NCBI RefSeq assembly: GCF_052425735.1
Contig: NC_135770.1
Span: 15,376,001 to 15,440,000, forward strand
Length of the DNA stretch: 64,000 nucleotides
Reading direction: 5' to 3'
DNA from: Oculina patagonica
Taxonomy: Eukaryota
Below the pieces are notes generated by a model, which saw only the letters and a program-made list of their open reading frames with translations, was not told the DNA's origin and did not search any database. Below are positions 26,885 through 59,000 of the stretch, piece after piece (the stretch's first letter is position 1; every line of letters starts with the position of its first letter). The translations under genes and the position numbers were made by a program.

Positions 26885-27321
26885 GAGGGGAATTGGGGTC
26901 ATTAAGAAACCGAAAAACCGCACAAAAAAATCATGCAAAACCGAAAAACCGAAGTGAATTTCGATCGAAACCGAAAACCGAACAGGACATTCCAAATTCC
27001 GAAGCTCTAAAGGGAAGAAAGAAATTTTTTTAAAGAGTCTTGACATTTTTGTTCATTAACATGCAGGTTTTCTTTCTACCAGCATGATCTCAGAGAAACT
27101 GTTAACCAAATTGGAAAAGCCGGAAACCAGAGCAAATACCAAATCCAAACACCCGCTAGTATTTTTGCCAGAAACGGAAAACTATGTGCTCATAGAAGGA
27201 AAACCCGAAAACCGAAGAAGACACCAAAACCGAAAAACTGCGGCGGTTTCTTGTTGCGAAAACCGAAAAACCGATCTAAAAAATGGCCAAAACCGAGAAA
27301 CCAAAACCCAAAGTCCCCCTC
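26885..27321. mobile_element. MITE with GAGGGG termini and AACCGAAAAACCG internal repeats
   Basis: Ends GAGGGGAATTGGGGT / ACCCAAAGTCCCCCTC; imperfect 8-bp TSD TTTTATGA / TTTTATTA. Confidence 0.65.
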
Positions 27322-27372
27322 TTTTATTATTTAGTTGTCCTGACTCATCTTTTCATATCCGCAGTTAATGCA

Positions 27373-29143
27373 ATGGCTCCCACAGACGTTTCAGTTCAAG
27401 GGGATAGTGAAATAAATGAATGTCAAAGCTGTGATTGTTGCAATGTAATAACCAATCACTGTCGCCGCCTGTACCAAAACATTTCTGATGAGCGACCGCG
27501 TGTAACAGAAGAAGACGATGGTGCAAGATTCTGGAATGAGAGAGCAAAGTGCAGTCGATTCTCTCTGCTTTTCCCGTTTTTTACTGCTCTGTTATTTCTT
27601 GCCGATGTTGGTATGGATTGTGAAATAGCTGCAACGCATTACATCAGAGGAGACCATAGATGGGCTGCGTACACACTGGGTGTGATTGTGTTCTCACTGG
27701 TAATCACTGATTTATTGTCAGCCATATTTTATCTCGAGGATCAGAGAAATCCTGGAAAAACAGAGTGGCTCCGCAGAAACAGCTTAGAAATAAAACCTTG
27801 GTTCTATGCGTTCCATTTTATTTTTTGTGGTCGTCTTATAAGGTAAGATACAAAAATGTGTTTTAGTTGAATAATTAAAATAAAATTCAGAACAAGTTTT
27901 AAGATGTTTGGCAAACGTGCCAGGTTTTGACAAAAGTAATGTAGCAGCCTCTTCGGTAATTGAATATAGCGCTGGGTACCCTGTGGTTTTGAGGGTTGTT
28001 TGGTGACCTAGAGTTCTTCTTCGGACATGGATTGATCAAACTTGACATGATTTATCTTTTAGGTGCTTTCAGATCTTTAAGACTGTGCGTCTGATACGAG
28101 GAATTCAAAATCAACATCCAGATAATACCCAGCGGTATCGCCTGTATATCTCTCAGCTGCAAGACTTGAGTGTATTGGGTGTCGTGGAAGCGTTTACTGA
28201 AGAGGCGCCCCAGGTACGTGTCAGCGGTGGTCAGCAAATATGCATTAAGCAGGTTGGGTGGAAAGTAGCTTCCCAATTGACTCAGTCGTTTAGGGGCGAT
28301 CGTGTTTCACTCCTCCCTACGTTCTCCCCTAAACTGTGTGGGAGGCTAGTTGGAAAGTGAAAGTGAATTACTTTGTGTTAAGTTAGTTCCTAACCCCTCT
28401 TTTTTTGCTTTTTTTTCTGCCAGGTTGCTCTCCAGATGTATATTCTAATTCAGAAAGGTACAATGGACTGGACGTCCTTCGCGGATGTGTTTGTGGCAAT
28501 AAATATCATGAAGTCTTTGGTTCTGTTCGCGTTCAGTTTATTAAGCTTTTGCAGGTTCCTTCGCCTAGGAAATGAACATAGCAAGCTGTTGGAGCTCTTT
28601 AGCTTTGCTTCTTTCTTTCATTTCGCTTGGCGCTTTTTCATGCTCGTTGCTAGGATACTCGCTTTAGTCGTGTTCGCTTCTACTTTCAAGCACTGGGTTT
28701 TTGTAGTCGTTGGCATCCAGTTGTTGTTTTCGTACTTTCTATTACACAGCCAGCCAAATAATTATTTTGAGGAAGGATCATTAAGAGATATATTGCTCAG
28801 GTTTGCATTTACTTGCATCAACCTGTTTTGCTTTTTCCCTTTGGCGGGCGAACAAACACGGAAATGGGGATTCCCCTATTACCTGGTGATTTTCATTGAG
28901 AATTCCATTATGGTACTTCTATGGAATTTCTTCAGCGATTTTGACAAAGTGTTCAAAATTATTATTCTAGTAACAGAGTGGGGCACATTTCTGCTTGGTC
29001 TTGTATCGGTTTCTCTGTATTATGGCGTTTTTCATCCTTCCTTAAAAGATCGTAACAATGAACTAACAATTGATGGCGTCACTCCACAACAAAACAATGA
29101 CGATGAGTACAATGATAATATGCAGTTTGAGAGTAACGTTTAG
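27373..29143 (+). CDS. XK-related protein, paralog B; exons 27373-27842, 28063-28213, 28424-29143
   Basis: Same exon phases and the same 151-nt middle exon length as paralog A. Motifs VEAFTEEAPQVALQMY, WRFFMLVARILALVVFAS, YYGVFHPS. Acceptor at 27364; in-frame gcaATGg at 27373. Confidence 0.93.
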
Positions 29144-30583
29144 AGTTTAACTCTAGTAGGTAGCACGCAGTAGAACCTCTGACCGAATGGACAGACCAAG
29201 GTGTCAGAATTAGCCAAGGTGTAATTATTTGATCATAGGCATGACGCCATTTCGAAAGACCAATGAGATGTCATAATGAGTAGATGGCGGAAGTGACCAG
29301 ACACCTGCCTTGTCCCCAGGCGCTTTTGCGTTTTGTCGGTGAAAAAGAAACAGGAGCCGGCGCTTGAGTATGGGGGGTGCAATGGTCTCACTTCACTCCT
29401 AGAATTCCCTCAATCCTCCTACTACCCTGTTACCCTTTTTACGCCAAATGATGTGTATCTCAAACAGTAAAGTATATATGTAAGACAAATATCAAGATGA
29501 AAATATGTAAAATAAAGATCGGAATCTACACTGTGTGATTTCGTGTCCATGCACTGAATAAGAACAAAATTTTTGTCCACAATAAAGAGGCAGAATTTAT
29601 CTGCACCTGAGTTATAGTGTTTGTTGTTCGCGTTATCGGGGTGTCCGCATTTATGGAGGTTCTTATCGGGCCCTTGCCGGAATCAACTGAACTGTCCATT
29701 GCCCAAACCTTTATCTGGCCGTTTTGAAATCCATCGGCTGATCTAGTGAGGTAAGGGCTTGAACAACCTCGGTGAAAAAATGAGACCTAAAGGACGTCAA
29801 GCCGGGTTGCTGTCTTTTTACCGGCCTTCTATATGGGTTTGGATTCACCATTTTTATCTCGAAAAATGATTTTTTTAATATCCGCCTTCCTCCTCAGTTG
29901 TAACCATTGAATTTCTGCAAGGGACAATGCAAAGGTACAGGATCCTGGTGGATCTAGTCAGCAAATTGTAGAGAATAAGCAACTAATAAAAGTAAGACTG
30001 TACGGCGTGATGACTTTAATTTCCAATATTTCGTCAGGCACGGTCTGACTTCCTCAGGGAATGATCCATGATCGATCTTCACTGAAAAAAATTACTTGCA
30101 TAGAACGTTAAAATCGTTGACATGTGTTTGGCTTATCGATAAGGTACGCCTCCCAGCTAGCTTTGCGTATAACGGGGTCTATAACAAATATGTCACGAAA
30201 AAATAGAAATAGAATCAAAATAGAGCTTGAGAAGAAGTTTTGGGGTGCAGGGCCCTCCCCTCCCGCGGTCCTTTGCTCTATACTAACCACGATCCAAAGC
30301 TGTAGACGAGTAGCTTAAAACCACATGGGCCTGAGATGCAGTGGTAATTTGAGTTACCCCGGTAATTGGAAATAATTACTGGCGTGAAGTAGAAAACCAT
30401 CTTCGTGTTGTTCGTGACTTTCATGTGACTCTATCGTGACAGGTCACGCCATAATACCCATGGTTCCACAAGTTCGTGTCCAGGTCCAATATCATTTCTC
30501 TCGGCTAGTTGGTTCGTGTAGCGTGGCACGTTTTATTCCTTAGCTATCTCTTTGCATTTCTCTCGGACGTAATTTTCAGAACC

Positions 30584-33500
30584 ATGGTAAGTATTCAGTC
30601 ATTTTAGTATTTTATGCACAAATTTCCATCTAAAAATTTAATTTACTGAATTTAAACGGGTTATCGTTTGTGCGTGATGGTAGTATGAGTTGGCCTTAGC
30701 TTAATTTTGCAATTCCATCGCATTTGAGAAATCGACGATTACGTGTTCCGAGCAAATTGGTGTTCCTAGTCTTCCAAAAAACTATTCGACTAAAAATCAT
30801 ATAGAAATAAAGGCCTATTTAAAATCCTTCCTAAATCACGCTTTCCGTAGTAAGCAAGCTTGCACTGGGATCTACGGCAGGCACATCGAAGATTTAGCTA
30901 GACCTGTCAAAAACACACCCATTACGTATACTGCAACAAACTTAATATCGGTTCAATTCGTGCATCGCCAGTCTGTATGCTTTGTGTAGTAACGATTGTG
31001 GTTTAAGATTCTTCCAGTATCTGATTCAAAAATGGACAAATATAAATGTACAGTACAGGTTTACGGACAAGGGGGCTGAAACCATTTTGTGTCCCACCCC
31101 CTGGGGCAGCAGTGATATGAGAGATCTCTTCCACTCAGTGGTAAAGGTCAAAGTTCCTTCTAAAAAAATAGTTAACAATTATTCCACGAGCACGCTTTGG
31201 ATATGAGATGGTAGGTAGCCAACTAGGGGTGTAGCGCCGAGCCACACTTTTATAACAATCTCATATCCAACAAGTGCGAGTGAAATGTTTTATTAAAAAC
31301 GCCCAAAGAATTGCAATATTTGAGCTCCCTGGCAGTTTTTGTTGATGTGCTTTGGCTACCATATTTGTGCTCAATACCATTGCCTGTTAACCAATCAAAA
31401 CACAGGAAATGCAATATACCATTGCTAGTTTTTAATAATCGTTTTTATTCATGGTTAGTTAGATATCTTAACAAAAAAGAGTGGAGAAGGTAAAAAATAG
31501 ATTATTTTCAATGTTTCAGCCTCCCCTGTTGTGTTCTTAGGCAAGACACTGCTCATTCAAAATACTGGGTTTAGCAAGAAATAAACTACTGGTCACTTTT
31601 TATTCCTGATCAGTGTGGTATTGGATTTTGTAGGCAGAACCATTGCGTGTTTGTATCACCGGCGCTGCTGGGCAGATTGCATACTCACTTCTCTATTCCG
31701 TTTGCAAAGGCGATGTGTTTGGAACTAATCAGGTATACCACAATTTTATGACTTCCAGTTATTGTTATTATTCTTCAACCCAAAAGTACAGTATAAAAAT
31801 AATTAAATAAAATAATTTTTCCCTCATTCAAGAGGTGTCTGAAATTGTCCTTAAAAAATTCTTTATTTTTTATATTGGTCTATGTGTCTCACAGAGATCT
31901 GTGCTGCTCAGTTGTGAAGACTTGTTTGCAATTAACAATCAATGCAACACACTTCATTGATGTTTGTAGGGCTAAATCTTTAGTAAATAAATGAAATTTT
32001 TATGTCTCTCTTGTGCTAAAAGAGCCGGGGGGACATGGGGATTTGTGGTGTTGCTTACTTTTTTATGCAGTGTTGCGATGAATAAAATACCATTTTTTTC
32101 TAAATCCCAAATTGATCAGGAATCTGAGTGCTACATGTTAGGCAGTACTGTGCAGTTGTGAAGTGCAATCCCAGTAAAATGATATAAATTGTTGTTCCTT
32201 CAAAATATTTTTTCATTTCTGATTGATAAACAGTCCTGGCTAATTCCTGCTAAGTGGCTAGCACTGGCCAAATATGGAAGACGTTTCTATTATTGGAAGA
32301 TTGACGTCATTTAACAGCAACTTTTGCTAGAAAGCGCAAAAATAACCGTAAGATTTGAAGGGTGTCATCCACTGAAGCCAAAGGCTGAGGCGGATATGAT
32401 ACTGATATGGAAAGGATATACTGATATGAAAGCGTGAGCTTAATTTATTGACTAAATTTTTTTACTGGTGACCAAACTTGAGCAGTCGGTGGCCAAATGG
32501 CCACTAAGGAAAAAAATAAACTTGGAGGGTTGAAACTAGTTAGCAAGTACTTTAGGAAAAAACTGCATTTCTTCCTCACTAAAACAGCTGTTGCCATTTG
32601 TTGTTATCAGCCACTGACCCTGATGTTGCTGGATATTCAGCCTATGATGAGTGTCTTGGAAGGCGTTGTGATGGAGTTGCAGGACTGTGCCTTTCCTTTG
32701 TTGCAAGGTAACTTGATCAAAAGCATGCAAACATAAAAGAGGTTTGATGGTTTGATGTAAAAGAACAAATCCTATTTTTCTGCCAATTTCACATCTCCAA
32801 ATCATCTACAGTGGTGGATCTAGGGAGGGGCCCGTGGGGCTCACCTTATTTTCAGGCCAAACAAAGGCTTGTGCGGCTGAGAAAAATTATTTTATTCTTG
32901 GAGTCTGGATGATCGAGCCCCCCACATACCTGAAGGTCTGGATCTGCTAATGATCAGTGAACCACTTCCATCTTCATTTCTTTTTTTATTGCTTGAATGT
33001 TGGCAACATGACACAAAGATATTTCCTTTTTAAATTTCCTATCATTAGATTATAATATGAGGCTCAGTTCCATGACCATATGTAAAGAGCTAGAACAATC
33101 CATATACAACTGATCAATCTGAAAAGTGTGAAAACACACATTTGTGTTTCAGTATGTTACTCTGCCTTACATTCACTAAAAGATAAGATGAGATGAGATC
33201 ATTTATTTACCCTTGGAGCTGATGGGAGATAAGTAGGCCCCAGGGGGGTCCCCTAGGGGAAACACAGTGGCCTAATGGTTAGCACACTGGACCCAGAGTC
33301 AAACAGCCTGGTTTCTAGCCCTGGCCAGGGTTGTTGTGTTGTGTTCTTGGGAACGACACTTAACTTTCATAGTCCCTCTAGCCTCCACCCAGGTCTATAA
33401 ATGGGTACTGGGGAATTTACTGCTGAGGGTAATCCTGCGATAGACTAGCATCCCATCCAAGGGGAGTAGAAATACTCCTAGTCGCTTCATGCTATGGAAA

Positions 33501-36500
33501 CCAGAATAAGCTCAGTAGGCTGGTATGCAGACTGTACCTTGTTACCAAGAAGAAATAAAAGTAATAAATGGTATGCATGGGGCAGTAGCTTTTTGATTGC
33601 ATCACTGAAATTTTATTACTACTTTCAATAGGTCATTACTGGTACTTTTGAAACTTTGCATTTTTATATTATATGCACAGTACAATCAACTCTCTGTTAA
33701 CAGGAACACACTCTTGTCTGTCCCCTCTGGAAATCCCAGATCTGAACCCCCACACCCTCGGAATTCCAATTGTAAGTATCCCCCATGCCTTCAGAATTCC
33801 AGTACAAAGACTCCCCCCCCCCCCCTGGGAATTCCAAAAAAGCTGTCTGTGGTATTGGTATGGAAATTTTCTGGAATTGCTTAAAGTGCCTATGAAGTAA
33901 AAAAATTTTTGGCTCTTTTTGGTAGCTTATTATGTCCTCTTTCCGAAAAGCTAAAAAAAAGGATAATGTCAAAGAGAGAGAAATCAGACTTTTTGCCACC
34001 TTTAGTGCCTTCTGTAAGGCAAAACAGTGGGTCTGGAGACGAAACAAATTTGGCTCGGATGACGTAGTTAGTGGTTCCACGGATCAGTTTACACTTAGAT
34101 TTTGTTGATACAGAGTGAAGTTCACTACTTCAGCTGAGATTGTTGCTGCTTTTTCGTTGATAAATCAAAATCATGTCCCAAAAGAACGATATGTTGCCAT
34201 CTGCGGACTTGGCAGAGTGTGTTTCAAGCAGAAAGGAATCGCACAACAAAATATCCTGACACTAAATAGACCAAAGTAGTTAGTTGGACCTGTCCAACTG
34301 CAAGCCAATCGAGCGCTCTTTCACACAAGCGCTGGTCGACGAGGACGTTCGAAGTTCGGCGAAGCAGATTCAAATTCCCTATAAAAATGAATAACTAGAA
34401 TTGTTATTTTTTCCAAAAGCACATACATCGACGGGCTTCGATTTTTGAGACGGTTTCGCAGTTTCGCAATGTGCTTCGGAATTGACACAACTGTTGACAC
34501 AAGCGCTGTTTCCTGGGGTTGCTTGCTTGCCGATTGCTTGTGTGAATTCAGGTTACGGTACGCCTATCCCGGTGGTTATTCGTTATTATATCACGATTTG
34601 GTGATTTTAATACAAGTAGAGATCAGTTGCTTGCTTTCATTTTGATGCTATACTTGTGTGGGAAGGTACAGTGGACTGAGATATTTTTCCGAAGCGTGAG
34701 AGCATTGAGAGTATAAACTGAGTGACATAATAAAACATGACAACACGGCAAGATAACACTTCTTCAAACCCAAAATTAGCACTTCTAGACTTAAACGAAA
34801 CCAAAAATTTCTTCTTCAAGGAATAAACAGAACTGCAGTTGTTTCTATTTATGGTACGTTAGCCCTATGGTATATTTTCAACCGTCTTTTAATATCCGGA
34901 TATGATAAAATCCTGATTACAATGCATGTTTATCGGCTAATAATTTGCTTAGGCAGCCGTAAAATTTGTCCAAGATTTTGCGAGATCCCAGTGTATTGTT
35001 TAAAAGTGCATTCGTCAATATTAGAATACTACCGGTAATTTAAATAGATCCAGCAGATCGAAGCAGTTGTGAATGACAACATTCGAAGCGCGCCACTTGG
35101 AATCAAACAAGCCTTTCTAACTCACTCAAGTCGAATTTACATTCCATATTTTTGCTTCTTTCCTAGCCTGTGTACAGCCGTCCCGCTCCGCTCAAAAAAA
35201 TCGCGGAGAGGGACGGCTGTACACAGGCTACTTCTTTCCCAGATGTTCTCGTTCACGTCTGGTGATTGTTCGTTTCGAGTTTTGGAAAAGGAAACGACTG
35301 CTACCTTACGGATGATAAAACGATCTTACTACTAACCATACATATTAAATTTTGAGGAACGAAGTCTCATAATAAAAGAATAACGCGTATACTGTACCCA
35401 GCTGTGTAACATATTGTACACTCCTGGCACGACTGCTAGATCTTTCTTTCGGCTAGTCAGAGCAGAATAATAATTATAGAGACCGCCATATCCTTTACAG
35501 AGATAATTCCTTTAATAAATTTCCTCTTCATTTCATGACTTTACCGTTTCATTTGTGGCAAGGAAGAGCTTGTGCCGAGAGCAGCGAACCTTGAGCTACC
35601 GACAGAACAGAATTGGTTTCTTCTTGTGTTTTCATTAGAGCGAATAGCTTTACGATACACACGGAAATTTTGCTTCCATTTACGCCGCGAAGCTTCACCA
35701 AAGAAAATAAGTGTATTTGTTGCAGTTTCTTTTGCACAATTGCCTTTGTTTGACTCAAAAGCCGAAAAATAGCTTTTGCCAGCCCCCTTTGCTCTCTTTA
35801 CGCCATAATCCTGGTGTCTTTAGAACCACTAAGTACGTCATTTCGTCATTTCCGTCATTTCCGAGCCTTTGGCTGCACGCTAAAAGGACCCACTTCGAAT
35901 TGCGAAATCCATACTTCAAGGCTCATAAAATACTAGAAAAAAGCGCTTTTGATCTCTTAAACATGCATATTCATGCTTACTAAGACATAAACAAGCAAAT
36001 TGAGCGAAATTATTTTTTACTTCATAGGCACTTTAATGTATCGCTGAACAAGTGAGCTAACACATACTGTTACCGGTACTATTTTTTCTCTCAGGGATTG
36101 TTTCATCTGCTGACCCAAAGGTGGCATTCAAAGATATTGATGTAGCCATATTGGTCGGTGCCATGCCACGCAAGCAAGGAATGGAGAGGAAGGACCTTCT
36201 GAAAGCTAATGCCAAGATCTTTGTTGAGCAGGGGAAAGCTCTGGATGAAGTTGCCAAGAAGACTGTCAAGGTAGGGTGTGTCACAGTAATAATTTTAGTG
36301 AATTGTGCATTTTTTTGATTCTTTCAGAGGGCCACACAAGAATTGAGTCAGGTCAGTACATCATTTTTGCACAAAAAGGACATTTTTGGTCAAGTTTTCT
36401 TTTGATTTTAAGAGGAAGACAAACTTGAAGGTTTTTTGTGTGTGTATTTCTGAGCATTAGTTAATGCCATCATACTTGTTAAGGAATGCATTGTACAACT

Positions 36501-39050
36501 CTTTCCCACTCTATGAGCTGATTATTTAAAACATCTCCTGACATAAAAAGTGATAAGGTCACAACTGGTGTCGTGCTGTTCAAGGCCAGTTTTGGCCAGT
36601 TTAGGAGACAATGGGTTAAACACAGTTTTTACATGTAGTTAATTAAAAAAATGTTCATGTTTGAATGTTGCAGATTTTGGTAGTTGGTAATCCAGCAAAC
36701 ACAAACTGTATGGTTGCAAAGATGAATGCGCCTTCCATCCCAGCGAGAAACTTTTCTTGTTTGACACGGTTGGATATGAACAGAGCCAAGGCGCAGGTAA
36801 ATAATCATTTACACCTGGTAATAGACTTGGTAATATTTCTTCATAGATACGGTGTAACAGCTTTTTAGGTGTAGAAGTTGGTTTCCATATTACATTTTCA
36901 TGATCATTCTCAAATAAAGGGAGTTATGGTGAAATCAAGAAAATAAAGTACTCCAATCTCTCTGGGTGACCACCTCTTGTAGGTGATAATTTTCTAAAAA
37001 TGCTAAATTTTTATGGCTTGTCAAATCACTATAATTGGAACCTTAAGTGTTATAACCTCTTGTAGAAAGTTGCAACTATTTTTAGGGCCAAGGTTTTGAA
37101 TTTTCTATTGTATTAGGATGCCTTAAAACCATGACAGGATGATAAAGTTTGTTTATTCTTACATTAGCACTTTCATCTTTTTATGTGATGTTTGTGAGCA
37201 ATTGTTGGTTCATCATGACACTGCTAGTATTGAAACTTGAAATAACTTAGATTTGTTATTAAATTAAGCATTTTGGGTTAACAGATGCTTTTGAGTATGG
37301 ATTAAGCCAGTAGCCAAGGTCAAATAACTGCAGGCTATAGCTCAAAATTAAAATCACTTTTGTCTGACTTCTCATAACCCACCGCCTACATGTACGTTTG
37401 ACATTTTGGGTGTCGGCTTATGATAGGTTTGACGATAACTATTAACGTTTAACAGCTGTTTTTGTGCATCAATCAATGCAGATTGCTGGCAGAGTTGGCG
37501 TCCGAGTGGAACAAGTGAAGAATGTCATCATTTGGGGAAACCACTCATCTACTCAGTACCCAGATGTCAATCATGGCACAGTTGACATGCCCGATGGGAG
37601 TGTGCCCATTAGACAGGCTGTCAAAGACGATGATTGGTTGAATGGAAGTTTTGTCACGGTATTTTACTGTTCAGCTTTTTGTTGGTGAAATAACTTTTAC
37701 ATGCACACACTGTAACCTTGAATGAAGCAGTGTTTATTGTATTTTTACATTAACGTATATTAGTTTTTCTGTCTTGCTCACTGACTGTGGAGCAGACAGT
37801 TGACAAGTCTTTATTCTTGGGGACATTATCTTGATTTATTACAAAAATTGTGTGGTTAAATTATTGTTTGGATGGGACAAGAATCGAATCCAGGGAGAGT
37901 CTCAATAATCCAGCCTTCAATATTCAGACCAGATTTAACCATGATATGACTCAGTGCCATCTCCTGTGATTATTTGCGAGTCGTTTGCATGCAAATCTTA
38001 AACTTTGATCTTGTACTCTTTCACACACAACTTTCTCATTGTTGTCCTGACACTGAGGACATCACTGTCATCCTGGTGAGTGATGAGGGGGGCACTGTAT
38101 CACATGTCGGATGGAGGGCGGGAAGAACGGCGGCCAGAAAAGGCAGAACACAGGGCGATGGCTAACAAAACTGGCTTTAATTACAAGTCAATAAGTGTTG
38201 TTAGTTTTATACTACTGGAAGTAGTTAAACAGATGTTTTCCTCCGTATCTAGACTGTTCAAAAGCGTGGTGCTGCCATCATTGCTGCTCGTAAGTTGTCC
38301 AGTGCCATGTCTGCTGCTAAAGCAATCTGTGATCACATGAGAGACTGGTGGTTTGGTACTCCTGAGGTAAGGGGCTCTACACTCTAACCACACCAGTTAT
38401 CCCCCTACCCCCTTATAAACTAACAGGACCTAAGTTTATATGTAGAATTCATTCACTGTTCAAAACAGAAATCTCTTGTTGTTAGTAAGCTTTTTTTAAG
38501 GTCTTTGTAACTGTTATTTGGAAAGAAATATCGACGCTAGAACATGACGTTTCGGCGTCATTCTGTCCTTATGGCAAATGTAAATTATTATAAAGTAGTA
38601 AGGTCAGAATATAGCAGTTTGAATGTCAAAACATGAAACTGTTTTCTCTGCATTTTTCAGGGAGGGGGCAGTACTCTCCCCATTCTCCTTGCAGCTCAGA
38701 AAACCTTGAGTAGACCATTACTGAGACTGCCTATATAGGCTATTTTAACATGATTACTTTGGTCTTTGATTTACAACATTAGAAGACTGCTTTATAATCC
38801 AATTTATTATTGAATCAGCTGTTTCGATGTGTGTCTGTAGGGTGCGATGGTGTCCATGGGCGTGGTCTCTGATGGGAATTCCTATGGTGTGCCAGAAGGC
38901 ATTGTGTACTCGTACCCAATGACCATTAAAAACAAGGAATGGAACATAGTGCAGGGTCTGACCATTGATGACTTCTCGCGTGAGAAAATGGATGCTACCG
39001 CCAAGGAGCTCTTGGAGGAGAAAGAAAGTTGCCAATCATTCCTTGAATGA
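30584..39050 (+). CDS. MDH1: Malate dehydrogenase, cytoplasmic (332 aa); exons 30584-30586, 31634-31732, 32611-32707, 36095-36270, 36674-36796, 37482-37658, 38253-38366, 38841-39050
   Basis: Motifs [84 protein letters not shown]. All introns GT-AG; exon lengths sum to 999 nt. Confidence 0.98.
33258..33540 (+). mobile_element. tRNA-derived SINE, diverged, in MDH1 intron 3
   Basis: Homologous to 45488-45786 (gtggcctaatggttagc..ccacccagg..taaatgggtac..atactcctagtcgct). Confidence 0.85.
33885..36032. mobile_element. Kolobok-like non-autonomous DNA transposon (2148 bp) in MDH1 intron 3
   Basis: 20-bp TIR AGTGCCTATGAAGTAAAAAA; TTAA on both sides (33881-33884, 36033-36036); purine-purine terminus, unlike piggyBac; no long ORF. 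Confidence 0.85.
35164..35230. mobile_element. 67-bp TAG..CTA mini-element with 9-bp TSD
   Basis: TIR TAGCCTGTGTACAGCCGTCCC; TSD CTTCTTTCC (35155-35163, 35231-35239). Confidence 0.85.
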
Positions 39051-39071
39051 CTAGCATTATCGCATCTATGA
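39048..39071 (+). promoter_or_regulatory. Stop-codon readthrough signal TGA-CTAG and 7-codon extension ending in PTS1 (SHL)
   Basis: TGA CTA GCA TTA TCG CAT CTA TGA = X-L-A-L-S-H-L-stop directly after the MDH1 ORF. Confidence 0.85.
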
Positions 39072-40787
39072 GTGTCAAAACACAGTGTAGCGCAGTTTAG
39101 GTCAGAGTGAAGTGTTTTATAACAGTGTAGGAGGCACAACTTGTACGGGTGCTATTTTTGATTTATTTTATTGCAGTAAAATGTAATTAAAGTGCAGTCA
39201 AGTCAAAACAGTGATGGTGTGGTATTTGATTATCTGCTCATGCTGCAGTTTCTTCTCCTTAGTCACCATGAATATAGTTTAAGGGCATTCCTTCCTTGCC
39301 ATCAAAGATGGCCTGTCGTTAAAAAGCGAGCAGAAAATGAGGTCGCTCAAATATTAGTGTTTGACACCAGACAAGGAAGGGTAACTGCAGGATAGCTTTC
39401 TCACTGCTGACTCTAGAAAGTGTTCTCTAAAGTGACGAATTTCAAACTTCAAGCTCTTTCTTAATGTTAGTGTGTTGTTTGAATGTTGTCAGGTTTTGTG
39501 TTAGATCCAACAGGTAGCTATTTCAAAACGAACTAGTGTTTCGTTTCCGGGTCGCAAAACGTTAAGCATAATAATAATATAAGTGATAAGTAGTGGAAAG
39601 ATTGAGGAGAGATGGGTTTGAAATTTTGGGAATGAGTATAACGGATTCGGAAGATTACGAAGCAGTGAGGTCTTTTGCATGCATTCAATTTCGTTTGCCT
39701 TTCGTTTTGCTTTCAAGAGGAAGGTGAAGGTTCGACGGATTTGGCCTTAAAACGTACCCGGATTGCGGATATTTTGCGATACATTGAGCGATTCGCAGCC
39801 AGATTTTGAAAATACAGCGGATTGCAGATTACCTGACAATTTTTGCACTGTCCGTTGTAGGGGAACTTAACAACCCAAAGTTTTCAAGTTATATGGATTC
39901 GGATTTGAACCAGATTTACGGATTTGGCCAAAAAAAAGCACGGGTCGTCGGATTTACGTACCCCTATTCACCCCATCCTTTCAATTTGCCCTTGAGCGCC
40001 GGACAATTCTTCCGTGCGAGCAAACACGAGGCAAAATTTACAAAGTCTGCAATAAGGAAGAATATAGCTAGAATGTTTGCATAACAATTAAACACGGAAA
40101 GGGTTTTTTTATTTTTCACCAATACATCGCTTTAGTCAAACTTGACAGCATTGAAGTCGTCAGAAATTTCAATTTGTAATAATTCTCAATCTTTTTTCCT
40201 CTTCCTGACGATTATATTTTCGATATTTGAAGAACGTTTTTTACCAGGCTGTTTGCCTCTGCCATAACGTGTTGACATTAATTGTGGTTACGAGCGTTCT
40301 ACTGATTGGATAGTAGCCCACACAGTGTAAATAGTTCACATCGAATCTAAAACAATACCGTGTTCGTTTCTGAGGAAACGAATAAAAAAAATCACAGTCA
40401 TAAATTCAATTGAAAGTTATCGGGAAGTATTTTCGTTCTTTGATACCGTTGCTATGTATTCTTTTTACAACAACATTGAAAATGAGATTATGGAGATGAG
40501 GTTTTAGTGTGCTCTCCGCCTCCCGTTTTTGAAAAGAAAAATTTACACCAAGAACAATTTCTGTTGTTTAACAAACTTCTCAGTATTCCGTTCCTTTAAA
40601 CAGACGTTGAACTTTCCCCACTCTTCCCACACACTCAAAGTTTCTGCCACCCAGATAAAGCTAACATAACAATAAGATATTAAGCACAGAGCACTTTTTA
40701 TTAAGACACGTTAAAGAATTGAACTTGATAACAGGAATGCAAGGATACTGAATTGTATGTTTTGGGTTGAGTTGACCTATCAGTGGT

Positions 40788-40885
40788 TAGCCTGCGTGGC
40801 AGACGTAAAAAGGGGGAGGGAAAAAACGCCTCCCTCTCCCTCTTCGTTCCTCCCCTTGCCCTTTCGACGCATGCCATGCAGGCTA
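40788..40885. mobile_element. Short TAGCCTG..CAGGCTA element (also present in duplicate copy 2 near 51412-51509)
   Basis: Ends TAGCCTGCGTGGCAGACGT / ACGCATGCCATGCAGGCTA; decayed 9-bp TSD. Confidence 0.6.
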
Positions 40886-43118
40886 TTCACTGGGAAAAAA
40901 GCCGTACAATAAAACGCACTGAGCAGTGCAAATTTGAAAGCAAAATGAATTGGAAAATTCAATCCGTTGTGGCATAATAATGCTGTTGACACGGGGGTGT
41001 CATTAGTTATAAATTAATACAAAAGTATTCTGATTGCTCGATTAGAATTACTATACCTCTGAATTCCCATTGGAGTGTAAACTCAATCTTGCCGCGCCCA
41101 GTTCCCGCTCGTCCAGGGAGATGTGGGCTCTAGTCGGCGAAAACAATAAAAGTTTCTGTCGGAAAGAGCGGCCGTTCGTGAGCAACCGAAAAGGGCAAAA
41201 ACGCATTTCTTAGCCAAAACTGTTATGCAGCTTTGAGGGCCAAATATTGTGTCGTCTTTCTCTCGCAGCCGGGCGGGTGCGAAGCCTTCCTTTCTAAATT
41301 TGGTCTATCCTTACTGCACGTCAACAATTCTAAAAATACCATGATGAATTCGAGGGCAGGGCTAAAAAAAAGTGGTGTGTGGGTGTGCGAATATAGCCGC
41401 CTCTCACGCTCCGATCCGCTTGTTGCGTTCGGAGCAAGCGGATCGGAGCGTGAGAGGCGGCTGTATTCGCAGGCTATAGGATTAACCGTTTTAGATTGGT
41501 TGGGTTGTTTTGTGTTCTATTGGAAAAACTCGCTTTTGGTTAGTTTGGTTGATCAACTTTCAAGCGGCATCAAACTAGGTTGAAATTCACCAATAGAACA
41601 CTTTTTAAATAACGTTTGGTTAAAATGGTTGACGAATATTTGACAATCCAATTAGCCGAAAATGATTATTTCCAATAGAGCACGAATAAAAATATAACCA
41701 ATCCAACCAGAAGCATATAATGCTTCTGATCCAACTAAACAGACAATCACGTCAATAGAACATGAGCGAATGGTTATCAATCGAGGGGGGCACCAACAAC
41801 TGGTGACGGTTGAAATTGAACACGACCCAAGCGTATCAATAGTTTAGTAGAATCCTAACTTAATTTGCTTTACATAACGAATTCCAAATATTTCTCGGCA
41901 TTTTTAGTAGTATAATCCTTCATGCTCAAGTGTAGCAAAGTCCCAAGCGGACTGAATTATCATTTAAAATTCTGGCAGCTGAGTGTACACGAGTTTAATT
42001 GGCAGTTGGTTTCGAGTTTTTGAAGTCACGAAACAGAGTATCTGTCCATCCTTTAGTTTTCTCAGGAATCTAATTATAAAGTACTTTTGTTTCTAAATCT
42101 TCCTGCGAAACTTCAGAGAAACGAGAAAAAAATAATCATTTTGTGGACGAACTACAGCCCGGCAATAAACAAGAAAATATATCTGTCTCCTGGGAATATG
42201 GCGAGCTCGTGACTCAACCAGTAGCCCATAAAGCGGGTCAATCAGTCCAAGGAAACATGATCAACCATGATCATTTATTACAAAGGAAGAAGGGATATTG
42301 TTGGATTATCTGTTATTAATAGGAAACATGGGAGAAAATGCAAAAAATTCAAAGATTCAAGGAAACTTGTACTCCAAGGCCGTCATTAAAATCCTTATTT
42401 TTGTTCAAAACGTGAATATGCCGACATAAAATGACATGGCATAGTTGACATATGATAACAAAGCTTGTCTATTCACTGAGTGCATCTTAAATTGATTATG
42501 GGACAAGAGAGTGGCTTGTGCTCACGTTTTTAACCCTCAGGTTAACCTCGTCAGTAAGGAAACATTTGTTTTGTTCCTGAACACGCGATGTTACGTGTTC
42601 TTTGGTGGACTTCGAGCAATGTACAACGGCAAACTTGGGCGTTTAAATTGAAATTTTATTTTTTCGCGAAGCAGACTCTTGCTTCATACTGCACAAAAAA
42701 GGACGATGCCGTCCACAGCTTCTTGAACGTTTTTAGGGCGTGGTAACTTCATCCTTGATTGTGGAAACCTATTACAGACAATATAAAAATGCCAGTAAAA
42801 CCTCCGATCAAAATTAATTTTGAATTTAGGTCGAAGTACAAGATATCATCATCAGAGCATGATTGAGTTGCCGTGTGTGAGAATAGGCTGGCAATTCTAT
42901 TTTTCAACACATTAAAGACATAAACAATAAATTTAGCAACTGTGCAAATACTCTCCACTCTCGATCCATAAAATACGCTTCATCATCGATCAAAACTCGG
43001 ACTAAACGGATAGCTGATACTCTATCTCACCCCACCTGACCACTTTAAAGTTAAGTTGCTTTTAAAATGTTGTTGATCTTTCAACAGCTGTATCAGAGCG
43101 CTGCACGGCATGAAACAA

Positions 43119-50400: not shown

Positions 50401-51989
50401 TCGGATATTTCATTAAAAAAGCTGAGTTTTCTTCAAAAATTAAAGACAGTGAAAACTGATAAAGTATAATTATACCTTTTGGATGAAAGAATAAACGCTG
50501 GTCAAAAAAGTTACCGTCTGAAAACTAGAATTGCGGCAAACAATTAAAAGCAAAAAAAGCACGGGTCGTCGGATTTACGTACCCCTATTCACCCCATCCT
50601 TTCAATTTGCCCTTGAGCGCCGGACAATTCTTCCGTGCGAGCAAACACGAGGCAAAATTTACAAAGTCTGCAATAAGAAAGAATATAGCTAGAATGTTTG
50701 CATAACAATTAAACACGGAAAGGGTTTTTTTTTATTTTTCACCAATACATCGCTTTAGTAAAACTTGACAGCATTGAAGTCGTCAGAAATTTCAATTTGT
50801 AATAATTCTCAATCTTTTTTCCTCTTCCTGACGATTATATTTTCGATATTTGAAGAACGTTTTTTACCAGGCTGTTTGCCTCTGCCATAACGTGTTGACA
50901 TTAATTGTGGTTACGAGCGTTCTACTGATTGGATAGTAGCCCCCACAGTGTAAATAGTTCACATCGAATCTAAAACAATACCGTGTTCGTTTCTGAGGAA
51001 ACGAATAAAAAAAAATCACAGTCATAAATTCAATTGAAAGTTATCGGGAAGTATTTTCGTTCTTTGATACCGTTGCTATGTATTCTTTTTACAACAACAT
51101 TGAAAATGAGATTATGGAGATGAGGTTTTAGCGTGCTCTCCGCCTCCCGTTTTTGAAAAGAAAAATTTACACCAAGAACAATTTCTGTTGTTTAACAAAC
51201 TTCTCAGTATTCCGTTCCTTTAAACAGACGTTGAACTTTCCCCACTCTTCCCACACACTGAAAGTTTCTGCCACCCAGATAAAGCTAACATAACAATAAG
51301 ATATTAAGCACAAAGCACTTTTTATTAAGACACGTTAAAAAATTGAACTTGATAACAGGAATGCAAGGATACTGAATTGTATGTTTTGGGTTGAGTTGAC
51401 CTATCAGTGGTTAGCCTGCGTGGCAGACGTAAAAAGGGGGAGGGAAAAAACGCCTCCCTCTCCCTCTTCGTTTCTCCCCTTGCCCTTTCGACGCATGCCA
51501 TGCAGGCTATTCACTGGGAAAAAAGCCGTACAATAAAACGCACTGAGCAGTTCAAATTTGAAAGCAAAATGAATTGGAAAATTCAATCCGTTGTGGCATA
51601 ATAATGCTGTTGACACGGGGGTGTCATTAGTTTAAAGGAGAAGTTCACTCCAGAATGGCCATTTATTTTCTTTACGCCAATAAAAAGTTTATGCAAAGAT
51701 ATGTTATTCACCAAAATTTCAGCCTCCAACGTGCGCTATAACCCTACGAAATCTTTCTTTGAAGTAGCCCAAAACTCGACAACTGAACGCCGCCATTTTG
51801 GAGCCTGATAATGTATGCGTGACGTCAAAGAGCTCAGCGTGAAGTTTGGCGGGAAAGTTTTAATAGTCGAAACTCCTTGTTTCTTTGTTGTGGCGTTTGT
51901 TTGTCAAAATACAAATGAGAAAATACAAATCTTTTCGCCGTCTTTCAATATCTCAAAGAAAAATTACTCAATAAGAATGGGTAGGGACG

Positions 51990-56068: not shown

Positions 56069-59000
56069 CACAGCACAGGGATCCTTTAACAAATTTCTGA
56101 GAAATGCTCCAGTGACACTTGATGTAAAATGTTATTGTAAGCCCTCGTTATGGGTTCAGCGATAAGCCCCCTCCTCTCCCTACTCCTTTCAGTTTTCTTA
56201 TCTTCCACAGTCGTTACCTTAACCCCAGCCGGCTCCTGTTATTTTTAGTGCAAAATTTCAAGCTTCGCCCTTAAAAACAGGCTTAGAGCGTTGAGTGACG
56301 TTTCACATTGAAAAATCACCCTCATGCAACTGGAACCGTCATCTATAGGCAGCAAAAGGGGAACAAAAGGGACAGGGCAAAGGAGCGGCGAAGAAGGCAG
56401 GATTTTGAATATCCTTTCCTATAAGAGGGGTGAGAGGCGGAGTCTAGTTGGTACTGCTTAAAAAAAAAAAGAAAAAAAAGAAACTAGCACGTCCTCTCTG
56501 CCCTGTCTCTGCTAAATCAACCAGTAAAGGAACATGTCTACAAATGTAATGCGTTTTGTACTTGAAATACTTATTTGGCAATAATCAGCGATAGCGGCGG
56601 CGCTTCCCATGTTACGATAACCCGCAAAAAGCCTTCCACAGATAATCATGAGTGAAAACCTGCAAACAAGTCGTCTGCTCTCCATCCAATATTTGAGCAT
56701 TGACAAATTCGTTATACCAGCATTTGGTGGAGACGATCATGTTTATTTAAGTAAGAGCAGTCATCGCATAAATTACATACATGTACGTTGTTGAAAAATT
56801 TTAAAATTCCACCCTGCAAGCTCCCCTTCCCCCCTCCCCAACCTTCTCAACCTCCCTTCCAGCCTTTGATTTGCCGCAGTCAGTTGTTGCAATAGTCTCA
56901 CCTCGTTTTGCCCATTTTTAGTGGCCCAAACAAAACTATAGCTCTCTATAAAGAGGATAAGATTTTTTGGCAAGCTTTACATTGAAAACAATTGCCTTAT
57001 CGGCTTATGCAACTGAAACCACCATCAGTGGACAGCAGGAGGGGAGGTGGGCATTCGCCTTTCGTTTCCTTAAAATGGAGTCGGAGGTGGAGTCTAGTCT
57101 GCACTGATTTTAGTACAAAATAGTCAGTTTTGTAACAAAAGAGGAAGAACTGGTCATCTCCGCTGGATTCACCAGTAGACCGACTTTCATGTTTACCGAT
57201 TTAACTTAAATATATTTGAAAATACTAACTTTCAGCGAACTGTACTAGAACAGAAATAACACAAGATCTAAAAACCCATAGCTAATACCCTACAATGATC
57301 ATGAATAAACGAACGTTGTGAAAGTAGGGGCATTTTTCAATGTGAACCTTGTATGCCTATTCGTTGTTTTGAGGATTATCTTATGAAATATAAAAGAAAC
57401 GACAATTATTTCCCGTGTAGCAGAGTGCCCAGTCACACTCCGTCATGATGGGTGCATGAAAAATAAAGATCTTATAACTGAGCACTTTTGAATTCTTCTG
57501 AATTGTCTTATTAACGGTAGATACACTTTCAGTGTTTAAGAGCAGACAAAACATGGTACATTAATTTGCCTTGTTTTTAATTTCAGCTGAAGAGTAGTAA
57601 ACAGCACAGCCAGCTCGCGGGAAAAGCAACACCTCAATGATAGGTTAAACATATGTACATTATAGGGTAATATAGCAAGAAAAGGTTTTACTTTAAGAAC
57701 CCATTTTCAATCGGCATGTGACATCTACTCCTTTTCGTGTATTTTAAATGATTAGATTATTTAAAATACAGAAATTGTGAAACTGTTTACGGGTATTGTG
57801 ACAAGCCGTGTCACGCAATTGTTTACATTTTAGCTGATTTACGGCAAAATTAGTGATAATCAAAGGCCGAAGCGGGCCACTAAAAACCTTTTCCCCAGAG
57901 ATTTTTTTGCATATCCTATTAGATAAGTCTCTAGTTAACCCATAAAAATTGTTTTAACGATATTTTAAGTTATCGCACATAGAAAAATATGGCAGAGTTT
58001 TACTGCATAATTTCGCTCGCTACTCATTTGCCAATTTTGCCTTTGGATTTATCCCCGTTTCAGGCTAAAAATTAATCTCGATTTGTTTTATTTTTCGCTC
58101 AGTCATACGATAAAGACCTAATTACATTATAAATATTATTGAAATATCAATAAACAGCTGCTGTATAATGCGCGAAGCGATCAAACTTTCAATAAAATCA
58201 GTCAAACCGGAAGTGGATTTTGAGTCCAATTGGGGCAAAATCTTTTTTTGCATATTTCTGCGAAAGGAAGCTGTATTAGGAAAAACTAACTGCAGTCCGT
58301 TTGGTTTCTCGCTAGGACCTATCTATGGGCAAAATATGAGCGAAATCGATTTTTCCAATTTGTGCCGAAGAAAGGCGATATTAGTTGATTTTTGGAGAAA
58401 GTCGCACTTAAATATCGGAAGACGGTGAAAATAAACACCTCTTTTTGTATTTCTTGGAGCTCTGTGTGAGCAAAATGGTGCTGCACAAACAAGCATTTTG
58501 ACAAACAAAAGCCACTACAAAGAAATAAGGAGTTTCGAGTACAGTCTGTATTTAAATTTCCGCGCCAAACTTCAGGCTGAGCTCTTTGACGTCACGCATA
58601 CATTACCAGCTCCAAGATGGCGGCGTTCAGTTGTCGAGTTTTGGGCTACTTCAAAGAAAGATTTCGTAGGGTTATAGCGCACGTTGGAGGCTGAAATTTT
58701 GGTGAATAACGTATCTTTGTATAAACTTTTTATTGACGTAAAGAAAAAAATGGCCATTCTGGAGTGAACTTCTCCTTTAATACAAAAGTATTCTGATTGC
58801 TCGATTAGAATTACTATACCTCTGAATTCCCATTGGAGTGTAAACTCAATCTTGCCGCGCCCAGTTCCCGCTCGTCCAGGGAGATGTGGGCTCTAGTCGG
58901 CGAAAACAATAAAGGTTTCTGTCGGAAAGAGCGGCCGTTCGTGAGCAACCGAAAAGGGCAAAAACGCATTTCTTAGCCAAAACTGTTATGCAGCTTTGAG

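What the first reader, a model, noticed from the sequence alone, without database searches (positions are those of the whole stretch)
39048..39071. MDH1 ends in UGA-CUAG and reads through to a peroxisomal PTS1 (..LE-X-LALSHL*)
Seen: the MDH1 stop is TGA followed by CTAG, then six in-frame sense codons ending Ser-His-Leu before a second TGA. Established: UGA-CUAG is the strongest known animal readthrough context, vertebrate MDH1 and LDHB use it to make minor PTS1-bearing peroxisomal isoforms, and SHL fits the PTS1 consensus [SAC][KRH][LM]. Inference: this probable cnidarian makes a peroxisomal MDH1x for peroxisomal NAD+/NADH shuttling, using a 7-codon extension much shorter than the vertebrate one. 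That would place the mechanism before the cnidarian-bilaterian split or show convergence. Standard annotation would miss it. I cannot verify whether it has already been reported for this lineage.
Basis: partly seen in the sequence, partly recalled or inferred. Interest (0 to 1): 0.9.

Follow-up and report, generated by a model that had tools for sequence, protein, structure and literature searches.

The report
Coral MDH1 stop-codon readthrough peroxisome tag
A coral's cytosolic malate dehydrogenase gene ends in a leaky stop codon followed by six extra codons that spell a peroxisome-import tag, and every relative examined keeps this arrangement; it is real, but it is a further example of a mechanism already published for animals, including the cnidarian Hydra.

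Summary
Window 39048-39071 reads TGA CTA GCA TTA TCG CAT CTA TGA, which translates as stop-LALSHL-stop, at the end of an eight-exon MDH1 gene on the + strand.

- **Chance:** of 6636 stop triplets in the window, this is the only one that combines TGA-CTAG with an in-frame PTS1 (peroxisomal targeting signal 1) ending.
- **Transcript:** RNA contigs from four runs carry the stop and extension unspliced and unchanged. The poly(A) tail starts about 160 nt downstream.
- **Relatives:** 14 distinct sequences seen as DNA all have TGA CTN followed by 4-8 in-frame codons. These end in SHL, SRL, SQL, SHI, AKL, SKL or CKL, and then a second stop.
- **Selection:** variation falls on third codon positions (1.34 bits against 0.40 and 0.36). 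Similarity drops to background after the second stop. This means the extension is selected as coding sequence.
- **Rivals excluded:** no SECIS element, no alternative splice and no significant RNA structure were found.

The best reading is a readthrough-made peroxisomal MDH1x isoform. Readthrough and import themselves were not tested.

The idea is not new. Stiebler et al. 2014 state that the cryptic MDH1 PTS1 is conserved in animals and already present in Hydra vulgaris. I found no report for corals or other anthozoans. What this adds is the very short extension and the codon-level evidence.

The parts
30584..30586 (+). Candidate first coding exon end: ATG directly followed by the donor GTAAG, in a good Kozak context (ACCATGG). 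Inferred only.
   Evidence: this is the only ATG(NNN)0-6 GT[AG]AG candidate in 27000-31633. It is in phase with exon 2 (phase 0). No RNA was laid here.
31634..31732 (+). MDH1 coding exon 2 ([20 protein letters not shown]..., NAD-binding GAAGQI motif)
   Evidence: AG/GT boundaries, in frame.
32611..32707 (+). MDH1 coding exon 3
   Evidence: Its 3' end is joined to 36095 in the loose ends of RNA contigs.
36095..36270 (+). MDH1 coding exon 4
   Evidence: joint 36268>36672 (cut +2, GT..AG).
36674..36796 (+). MDH1 coding exon 5 (NPANTN; RLDMNRA where mammals have RLDHNRA)
37482..37658 (+). MDH1 coding exon 6 (IWGNHSSTQ, catalytic His)
38253..38366 (+). MDH1 coding exon 7
38841..39047 (+). Coding part of the last MDH1 exon, ending ...[11 protein letters not shown]
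39048..39050 (+). Annotated stop, UGA (the proposed leaky stop)
   Evidence: TGA is invariant in all 12 aligned sequences.
39051..39054 (+). CUAG directly after the stop; with the UGA it forms the high-readthrough motif UGA CUA G
   Evidence: CT is invariant in relatives and CTAG is present in most. Motif from PMC12233894.
39051..39068 (+). Six-codon readthrough extension, L-A-L-S-H-L
   Evidence: No variant in four RNA runs. Wobble-type conservation.
39060..39068 (+). PTS1 tripeptide codons TCG CAT CTA (Ser-His-Leu)
   Evidence: SHL is the PTS1 of human DAO. Relatives have SHL, SRL, SQL, SHI, AKL, SKL or CKL.
39069..39071 (+). Second stop (UGA followed by G), which leaves the PTS1 at the very C-terminus
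39072..39210 (+). Rest of the 3'UTR: ATTAAA at 39186-39191, poly(A) added at about 39208-39210
   Evidence: RNA contigs end at 39208 or 39210 with runs of A. Sequence.

Best explanation
The gene is the coral's cytosolic NAD-malate dehydrogenase (MDH1). Most ribosomes stop at UGA 39048-50 and make the normal cytosolic enzyme. Because the stop is UGA followed by CUA G, a small share of ribosomes should put an amino acid there (Trp or Arg in human cells). They would then translate six more codons and stop at the second UGA. That gives MDH1x ending ...SFLE-X-LALSHL. [quoted passage not shown] MDH is a dimer, so unextended partner subunits might be carried in as well. Inside the peroxisome it would regenerate NAD+ for beta-oxidation through a malate/oxaloacetate shuttle. 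Shown here: the sequence, the gene's identity, an mRNA that runs unspliced across the stop, conservation in all relatives examined, and a coding-type pattern of substitutions in the extension. Inferred: that readthrough happens in the coral and at what rate, which residue is inserted, PEX5-dependent import, and the metabolic role.
For: - **Sequence and gene:**
- **Chance:** 1 of 6636 stop triplets in the window has both features, with an expectation of 2.5e-6 per stop.
- **RNA:** contigs from 4 runs under 3 organism labels cover 38839-39208 without a joint. None shows a variant in 39048-39071, and a poly(A) tail starts at about 39208.
- **Relatives seen as DNA**: LALSHL, LASSHL, LVFSHL, LVSSRL, LASSRL, LATSRL, LFSSQL, LVTSQL, LVTSHL, LVPSHL, LVICTSHI, LVVRCKL, LAKL and LSKL. 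Each follows TGA CTN and is followed by a stop.
- **Relatives seen as protein:** gene calls made with TGA read as Trp show the same pattern, for example W-LIMSHL-W and W-LASSSL-W.
- **Coding signature:** entropy by codon position is 0.40, 0.36 and 1.34 bits. Ser is TCG, TCA or TCT, the final Leu is CTA, CTC, CTG or CTT, and His to Arg goes CAT to AGG.
- **Decay of similarity:** mean pairwise identity is 0.76 in the CDS tail, 0.67 in the extension and 0.57 in the next 60 nt, against 0.53 for shuffled sequence. TGACT is invariant in the alignment.
- **Literature:** PMC4207609, PMC5133446, PMC12233894, PMC6770196.
Against: - There is no ribosome profiling, reporter assay, proteomic or localisation evidence for any coral or anthozoan.
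- The extension is only 7 residues including the read-through position, against 19 in humans. Whether PEX5 can reach it on the folded dimer is untested.
- Some relatives carry weaker tripeptides (SQL, SSL, SHI).
- A few have CTAT, CTGG or CTCG instead of CTAG. These fit the minimal UGA CU motif but may be less leaky.
- The coral lacks two further positions that the 2025 study links to the highest readthrough: C at -5 and C at +9.
- The relatives come from unlabelled assemblies, so how widely they are spread across taxa is not documented by name.
Confidence: 0.82

Rival explanations
1. Chance: an ordinary stop that happens to be followed by CTAG and by a short open frame ending in SHL, with no function.
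For: Short motifs do arise by chance. The window holds 6 TGA-CTAG sites and 18 chance PTS1-ending frames.
Against: Only this site has both features, with an expectation of 2.5e-6 per stop. It sits in the one gene known for this mechanism. All 14 distinct relatives keep it while the following UTR diverges to background.
Confidence: 0.02
2. A conserved untranslated 3'UTR element, such as a binding site for a protein or a small RNA, or an RNA structure. On this view it only looks like a PTS1 when translated.
For: TGACT and several following bases are conserved at the nucleotide level.
Against: Variation is concentrated at third codon positions (1.34 bits against 0.40 and 0.36). The residue class is kept through multi-base changes (CAT to AGG or AAA). 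The frame and the second stop are kept even where the length differs (4, 6, 7 or 8 codons). The 3'UTR fold is not significant, z = -1.4.
Confidence: 0.04
3. The PTS1 form is made some other way: alternative splicing as in some fungi, RNA editing or an allelic TGA-to-sense change, or selenocysteine insertion at UGA.
For: Fungi make peroxisomal isoforms of metabolic enzymes by alternative splicing (PMC4207609, PMC5133446). UGA can encode Sec.
Against: RNA contigs show no joint inside 38839-39208 and no base difference at 39048-39071 in four runs. No SECIS or other Rfam match up to E = 1 in the 3'UTR. Assembled contigs drop rare variants, so minor isoforms are not excluded.
Confidence: 0.04
4. 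Readthrough happens and is selected, but the extension serves another purpose, for example as a degradation or quality-control tag, rather than for peroxisomal import.
For: Import was not tested. Some relatives have weak tripeptides (SQL, SSL, SHI).
Against: What is conserved is exactly the PTS1 pattern [SAC]-[KRHQ]-[LI] placed directly before a stop, while the spacer residues vary. The homologous vertebrate extension has been shown to target peroxisomes.
Confidence: 0.06

Closest known systems
MDH1x, the readthrough-extended peroxisomal isoform of vertebrate cytosolic malate dehydrogenase (Stiebler et al. 2014, PMC4207609; Hofhuis et al. 2016, PMC5133446)
   Same: The host gene is orthologous and the stop lies at the equivalent place, with the coral protein ending about two residues earlier. 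It has the same UGA CUA G context, a cryptic PTS1 at the end of the in-frame extension, and both are conserved across relatives.
   Different: The extension is 6 codons (4-8 in relatives) instead of about 18-19. The tripeptide is SHL, or SRL, SQL, AKL or SKL in relatives, instead of CRL in mammals and SRL in other vertebrates. There is no experimental evidence in this lineage.
Hydra vulgaris MDH1 cryptic PTS1 (Stiebler et al. 2014, Fig. 4C, as described in their text)
   Same: A cnidarian MDH1 with a readthrough-dependent PTS1. This is the published basis for dating the trait before the cnidarian-bilaterian split.
   Different: Hydra is a hydrozoan, whereas this window is from a coral. I could not see the figure, so the Hydra extension sequence was not compared. 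The paper gives no codon-level selection analysis and no anthozoan example, as far as its text and held supplements show.
LDHBx, mammalian lactate dehydrogenase B readthrough isoform (Schueren et al. 2014, PMC4359377)
   Same: The same logic: UGA CUA G, a short extension, a hidden PTS1, and import of unextended subunits alongside.
   Different: A different enzyme. LDHBx is restricted to mammals, whereas the MDH1 case is broadly distributed.
MDH1 lineages with a PTS1-like end in the main reading frame (...AVCKL, ...EGKL)
   Same: The same enzyme acquires a C-terminal PTS1-like tripeptide. Stiebler et al. also list 'no readthrough' cases.
   Different: No stop codon has to be read through, so all copies carry the signal rather than a minor share.

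Membership tests
MDH1x-type functional translational readthrough (UGA CU(A G) + cryptic PTS1) | The host gene is the cytosolic NAD-malate dehydrogenase (MDH1) orthologue | tested here: met
   Eight-exon model with AG/GT boundaries, 331 aa plus Met. Exons match human and pig cytoplasmic MDH best: E 1.3e-26 for the last exon and 3.9e-16 for exon 5.
MDH1x-type functional translational readthrough (UGA CU(A G) + cryptic PTS1) | The annotated stop is UGA followed by CU, ideally CUA G | tested here: met
   TGA CTAG at 39048-39054. Motif definitions in PMC4207609 and PMC12233894.
MDH1x-type functional translational readthrough (UGA CU(A G) + cryptic PTS1) | The in-frame extension ends, directly before the next stop, in a PTS1 tripeptide | tested here: met
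   LALSHL then TGA. SHL fits [SAC][KRH][LM] and is the PTS1 of human DAO, with measured PEX5 binding. No PTS1 predictor was available.
MDH1x-type functional translational readthrough (UGA CU(A G) + cryptic PTS1) | Both the stop context and the PTS1 are conserved across relatives | tested here: met
   14 distinct relatives seen as DNA and 7 more seen as TGA=Trp gene calls all keep it. Third-position wobble. Similarity is lost after the second stop.
MDH1x-type functional translational readthrough (UGA CU(A G) + cryptic PTS1) | The extension lies on the mature mRNA, contiguous with the coding sequence | tested here: met
   RNA contigs span 38839-39208 unspliced in 4 runs, with a poly(A) tail at about 39208.
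MDH1x-type functional translational readthrough (UGA CU(A G) + cryptic PTS1) | Measured readthrough above background (reporter assay, ribosome profiling or peptide evidence) | not testable with these tools
   No Ribo-seq or proteomic data could be reached.
MDH1x-type functional translational readthrough (UGA CU(A G) + cryptic PTS1) | PEX5/PTS1-dependent import of the extended form into peroxisomes | not testable with these tools
   Needs a localisation experiment.
Selenoprotein (UGA = Sec) | A SECIS element in the 3'UTR | tested here: not met
   Rfam scan of 38800-41000 at E up to 1 found no SECIS. The 3'UTR is only about 160 nt.
Peroxisomal isoform by alternative splicing (fungal type) | An alternative splice junction that creates the PTS1-bearing C-terminus | tested here: not met
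   No joint within the last exon in four RNA runs. Contigs can miss rare isoforms.

The most novel reading that the evidence does not exclude
The coral-type arrangement would be the minimal natural form of the MDH1x module: UGA, a CUN leucine codon, zero to four spacer codons, a PTS1 and a firm second stop, 4-8 codons in all. On this reading it is kept under coding selection across the whole anthozoan-like sample. Together with the bilaterian cases this would make UGA-CU readthrough of MDH1 a single ancestral trait older than the cnidarian-bilaterian split, with the 19-residue vertebrate extension a later elaboration. It would then be among the oldest programmed readthrough events known in animals.
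Probability: 0.55. Interest if true: 0.45.

Novelty: new member of a known kind. Interest (0 to 1): 0.3.

Why it matters
It adds a well-supported anthozoan case to a known mechanism for sending one gene product to two compartments. Three consequences follow.

- **Annotation:** standard coral gene models will list MDH1 as purely cytosolic, so inventories of coral peroxisomal proteins will miss the NAD+/NADH shuttle enzyme.
- **Mechanism:** four to six codons after the stop are enough for selection to maintain the signal. That gives a compact natural cassette for testing how short a readthrough PTS1 extension can be.
- **Evolution:** the data support, but do not originate, the view that MDH1 readthrough predates the cnidarian-bilaterian split. 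Peroxisomal lipid metabolism matters for coral-algal symbiosis and its energy budget, so the isoform is worth including in metabolic models.

Tried and rejected
- **Representative-library search** with the last exon. It returned mostly unnamed fragments and no labelled full-length cnidarian MDH1. It was useful only for extra TGA=Trp gene calls.
- **Cluster look-up**. It gave no names or accessions, so the relatives stay taxonomically unlabelled.
- **One relative, P0009,** and one of the two contigs carrying P0037 had no retrievable DNA.
- **Supplements of Stiebler 2014**. They hold no species table naming Hydra, Nematostella or Acropora, and Fig. 4C itself is not held.
- **Paper searches** for coral, Nematostella or cnidaria together with readthrough and PTS1. 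They found only Stiebler 2014.
- **Selenocysteine:** rejected, no SECIS.
- **A stimulatory RNA structure** in the 3'UTR: not supported, z = -1.4.
- **Alternative splicing or editing:** not seen.
- **The earlier-findings index** has nothing on this site.
- **Structure prediction** of the extended protein was not attempted. The tools do not accept a read-through protein by reference, and I did not type the spliced sequence in.
- **The first exon** (ATG at 30584) is a lone pattern match and was not confirmed by RNA.

Full report
**1. The observation**

Window 39048-39071 reads TGA CTA GCA TTA TCG CAT CTA TGA. This is a UGA stop followed by CUAG, then six sense codons L-A-L-S-H-L and a second UGA. 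The frame is that of the open frame 38841-39047, which ends ...[15 protein letters not shown].

As a control I walked every stop triplet on both strands of the window. Of 6636 stops, 2408 are TGA and 6 are TGA-CTAG. Eighteen have an in-frame extension ending in [SAC][KRH][LM]. Exactly one has both features, and it is this site. The product of the two frequencies is about 2.5e-6 per stop, so a genome of some tens of thousands of genes would not be expected to show even one such case by chance. This case also sits in MDH1, the gene already known for the mechanism.

**2. The gene**

MDH motifs line up on the + strand from 31.6 to 39.05 kb. With AG/GT boundaries the exons are:

- 31634-31732
- 32611-32707
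- 36095-36270
- 36674-36796
- 37482-37658
- 38253-38366
- 38841-39050

They join into an uninterrupted 331-residue frame. The protein carries [25 protein letters not shown] and IWGNHSSTQ.

The four downstream introns are confirmed by GT..AG joints in RNA contigs. A single upstream candidate, ATG|GTAAG at 30584 in an ACCATGG context, would supply the initiator Met. That is an inference only.

The last exon and exon 5 match human and pig cytoplasmic malate dehydrogenase best: 7RM9, 4MDH and 5MDH, with E 1.3e-26 and 3.9e-16. The coral protein ends about two residues before the human C-terminus.

Sequencing runs that hold this stretch include some labelled 'coral metagenome'. Together with the animal-type introns this makes the gene the coral host's own.

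**3. The transcript**

Contigs from four RNA runs under three organism labels cover 38839 or 38868 to 39208 or 39210 in one piece. Two of the contigs end in runs of A. An ATTAAA sits at 39186-39191.

The 3'UTR is therefore only about 160 nt, and the stop, the extension and the second stop all lie on the mature mRNA. No joint falls inside the last exon. No base difference is reported within 39048-39071. The nearest differences are a synonymous A>G at 39047 and an A>G at 39078.

An Rfam scan of 38800-41000 at E up to 1 finds no SECIS. The 3'UTR does not fold significantly better than shuffled sequence, z = -1.4.

**4. Relatives**

Searching the last-exon peptide gave 74 short gene calls from genomic contigs.

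Several had been called with TGA read as Trp, which shows the extension directly:

- ...SFLE-W-LASSHL-W
- W-LVSSRL-W
- W-LASSRL-W
- W-LASSSL-W
- W-LIMSHL-W
- W-LMMSHL-W
- W-LVTSQL

Every sequence with a coral-like C-terminus has TGA CTN followed by a short in-frame extension and a stop:

| Extension | Loci | Context or second stop |
|---|---|---|
| LALSHL | window, L001 | |
| LASSHL | L002-4 | second stop TAG |
| LVFSHL | L005 | |
| LVSSRL | L006/7 | |
| LASSRL | L016/17/23 | |
| LATSRL | L019 | |
| LFSSQL | L008/9/18 | CTAT |
| LVTSQL | L010 | |
| LVTSHL | L012 | |
| LVPSHL | L013 | CTGG |
| LVICTSHI | L011 | eight codons, TAA |
| LVVRCKL | L014 | seven codons |
| LAKL | L015 | four codons, CTCG |
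| LSKL | L022 | four codons |

These relatives are 66-90% identical to the window's exon at the protein level, so they are not copies of one genome.

More distant MDH1 sequences in the same searches show the same arrangement with longer or different extensions: W-LIAGDGNVSKL-W, W-LAGPAESKL-W, W-LSDSKL-W, LISCKL, LQQSQL and a 26-residue extension ending ...VSKL. Others carry ...CKL or ...GKL at the end of the main frame.

**5. Is the extension selected as protein?**

In the eight six-codon extensions, column entropy by codon position is 0.40, 0.36 and 1.34 bits. For the four functionally critical codons (the first Leu and the tripeptide) it is 0.14, 0.14 and 1.30 bits.

- The Ser codon is TCG, TCA or TCT.
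- The final Leu is CTA, CTC, CTG or CTT.
- The middle residue stays H, R, K or Q through changes as large as CAT to AGG.

Mean pairwise nucleotide identity is 0.76-0.77 in the last 120 nt of the coding sequence and 0.67 in the extension. It is 0.57 in the 60 nt after the second stop, against about 0.53 for shuffled sequence. In the multiple alignment, TGACT is invariant in all twelve sequences, and alignability collapses after the second stop.

Where the length changes, it changes by whole codons, and the PTS1 stays adjacent to a stop. A conserved untranslated element would not produce this pattern.

**6. Mechanism**

Established knowledge:

- UGA CUA G is the high-readthrough motif in human cells, and UGA CU is its core in fungi and animals (PMC4207609, PMC12233894).
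- About 4% of human MDH1 is extended, with Trp or Arg inserted at the stop. The extension carries a hidden PTS1 that directs it to peroxisomes (PMC5133446).
- SHL is the native PTS1 of human D-amino-acid oxidase, and it loses PEX5 affinity when mutated (PMC6770196).

By inference, the coral makes a minor MDH1x ending ...SFLE-X-LALSHL that PEX5 imports. It would serve the peroxisomal NAD+/NADH malate shuttle, possibly carrying unextended subunits of the dimer with it.

The second stop is followed by G in most relatives, whereas the first stop is followed by C. That fits the requirement that a PTS1 sit at the very C-terminus.

None of the functional steps has been measured in this lineage. The shortness of the extension leaves open whether it is accessible on the folded enzyme.

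**7. Comparison with what is known, and novelty**

Stiebler et al. [quoted passage not shown] Hofhuis et al. 2016 document CRL in mammals and SRL in other vertebrates.

Full-text searches for coral, Nematostella or cnidaria together with readthrough and PTS1 returned nothing beyond Stiebler 2014. The site therefore passes every sequence-level membership test for the MDH1x family. The two experimental tests could not be run.

It is a new member of a known kind. Three things are new here: the anthozoan-type example, the very short 4-8 codon form, and explicit codon-level evidence of selection.

**8. Limits**

The relatives come from unlabelled assemblies. I cannot name their taxa, so I cannot map gains and losses on a tree. 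RNA evidence comes from assembled contigs, which drop rare variants. No PTS1 predictor or structure of the extended protein was available.

Noticed in passing
window 39931-41013 vs 50552-51636; 41014-41500 vs 58777-59263: Two direct repeats downstream of MDH1: 98.8% identity over 1086 nt and 98.6% over 487 nt.
   Followed up: partly
window 40787-40889 and 41386-41471: A hairpin-forming stretch with weak, sub-threshold matches to several unrelated microRNA families on both strands (best E 8e-4, 29.5 bits against a gathering score of 90). Nearby is an 86-nt inverted repeat that is also present at 59149-59234. It is probably a small transposon-like element rather than a microRNA.
   Followed up: no
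window 36674-36796 (MDH1 exon 5): The conserved motif RLDHNRA of mammalian cytosolic MDH reads RLDMNRA here. The residue next to the catalytic-dyad Asp is Met instead of His. Whether relatives share this was not checked.
   Followed up: no
L015:1696-1725: In the relative with the four-codon extension LAKL, the second stop is again TGA CTG G, itself a leaky-type context, followed by three codons and TAA. A second readthrough there would bury the PTS1.
   Followed up: no
L020, L021, L022, L025, L036, L037, L046, L089 (metagenome contigs): Other, more distant MDH1 genes also show TGA CTN plus an in-frame PTS1-type end: a 26-residue extension ending VSKL, and LQQSQL, LSKL, LPGKL, LISCKL, LNNKL and LLPACRL. 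One has TGA CGG followed by RSRLSRL. L024/L026 (TGA TGCG) have none. The taxa are unknown.
   Followed up: partly
window 39518-39651: One RNA run (X17) shows a depth of about 245 on this stretch beyond the MDH1 poly(A) site, while the other runs show next to none. It may be a repeat or a separate small transcript.
   Followed up: no
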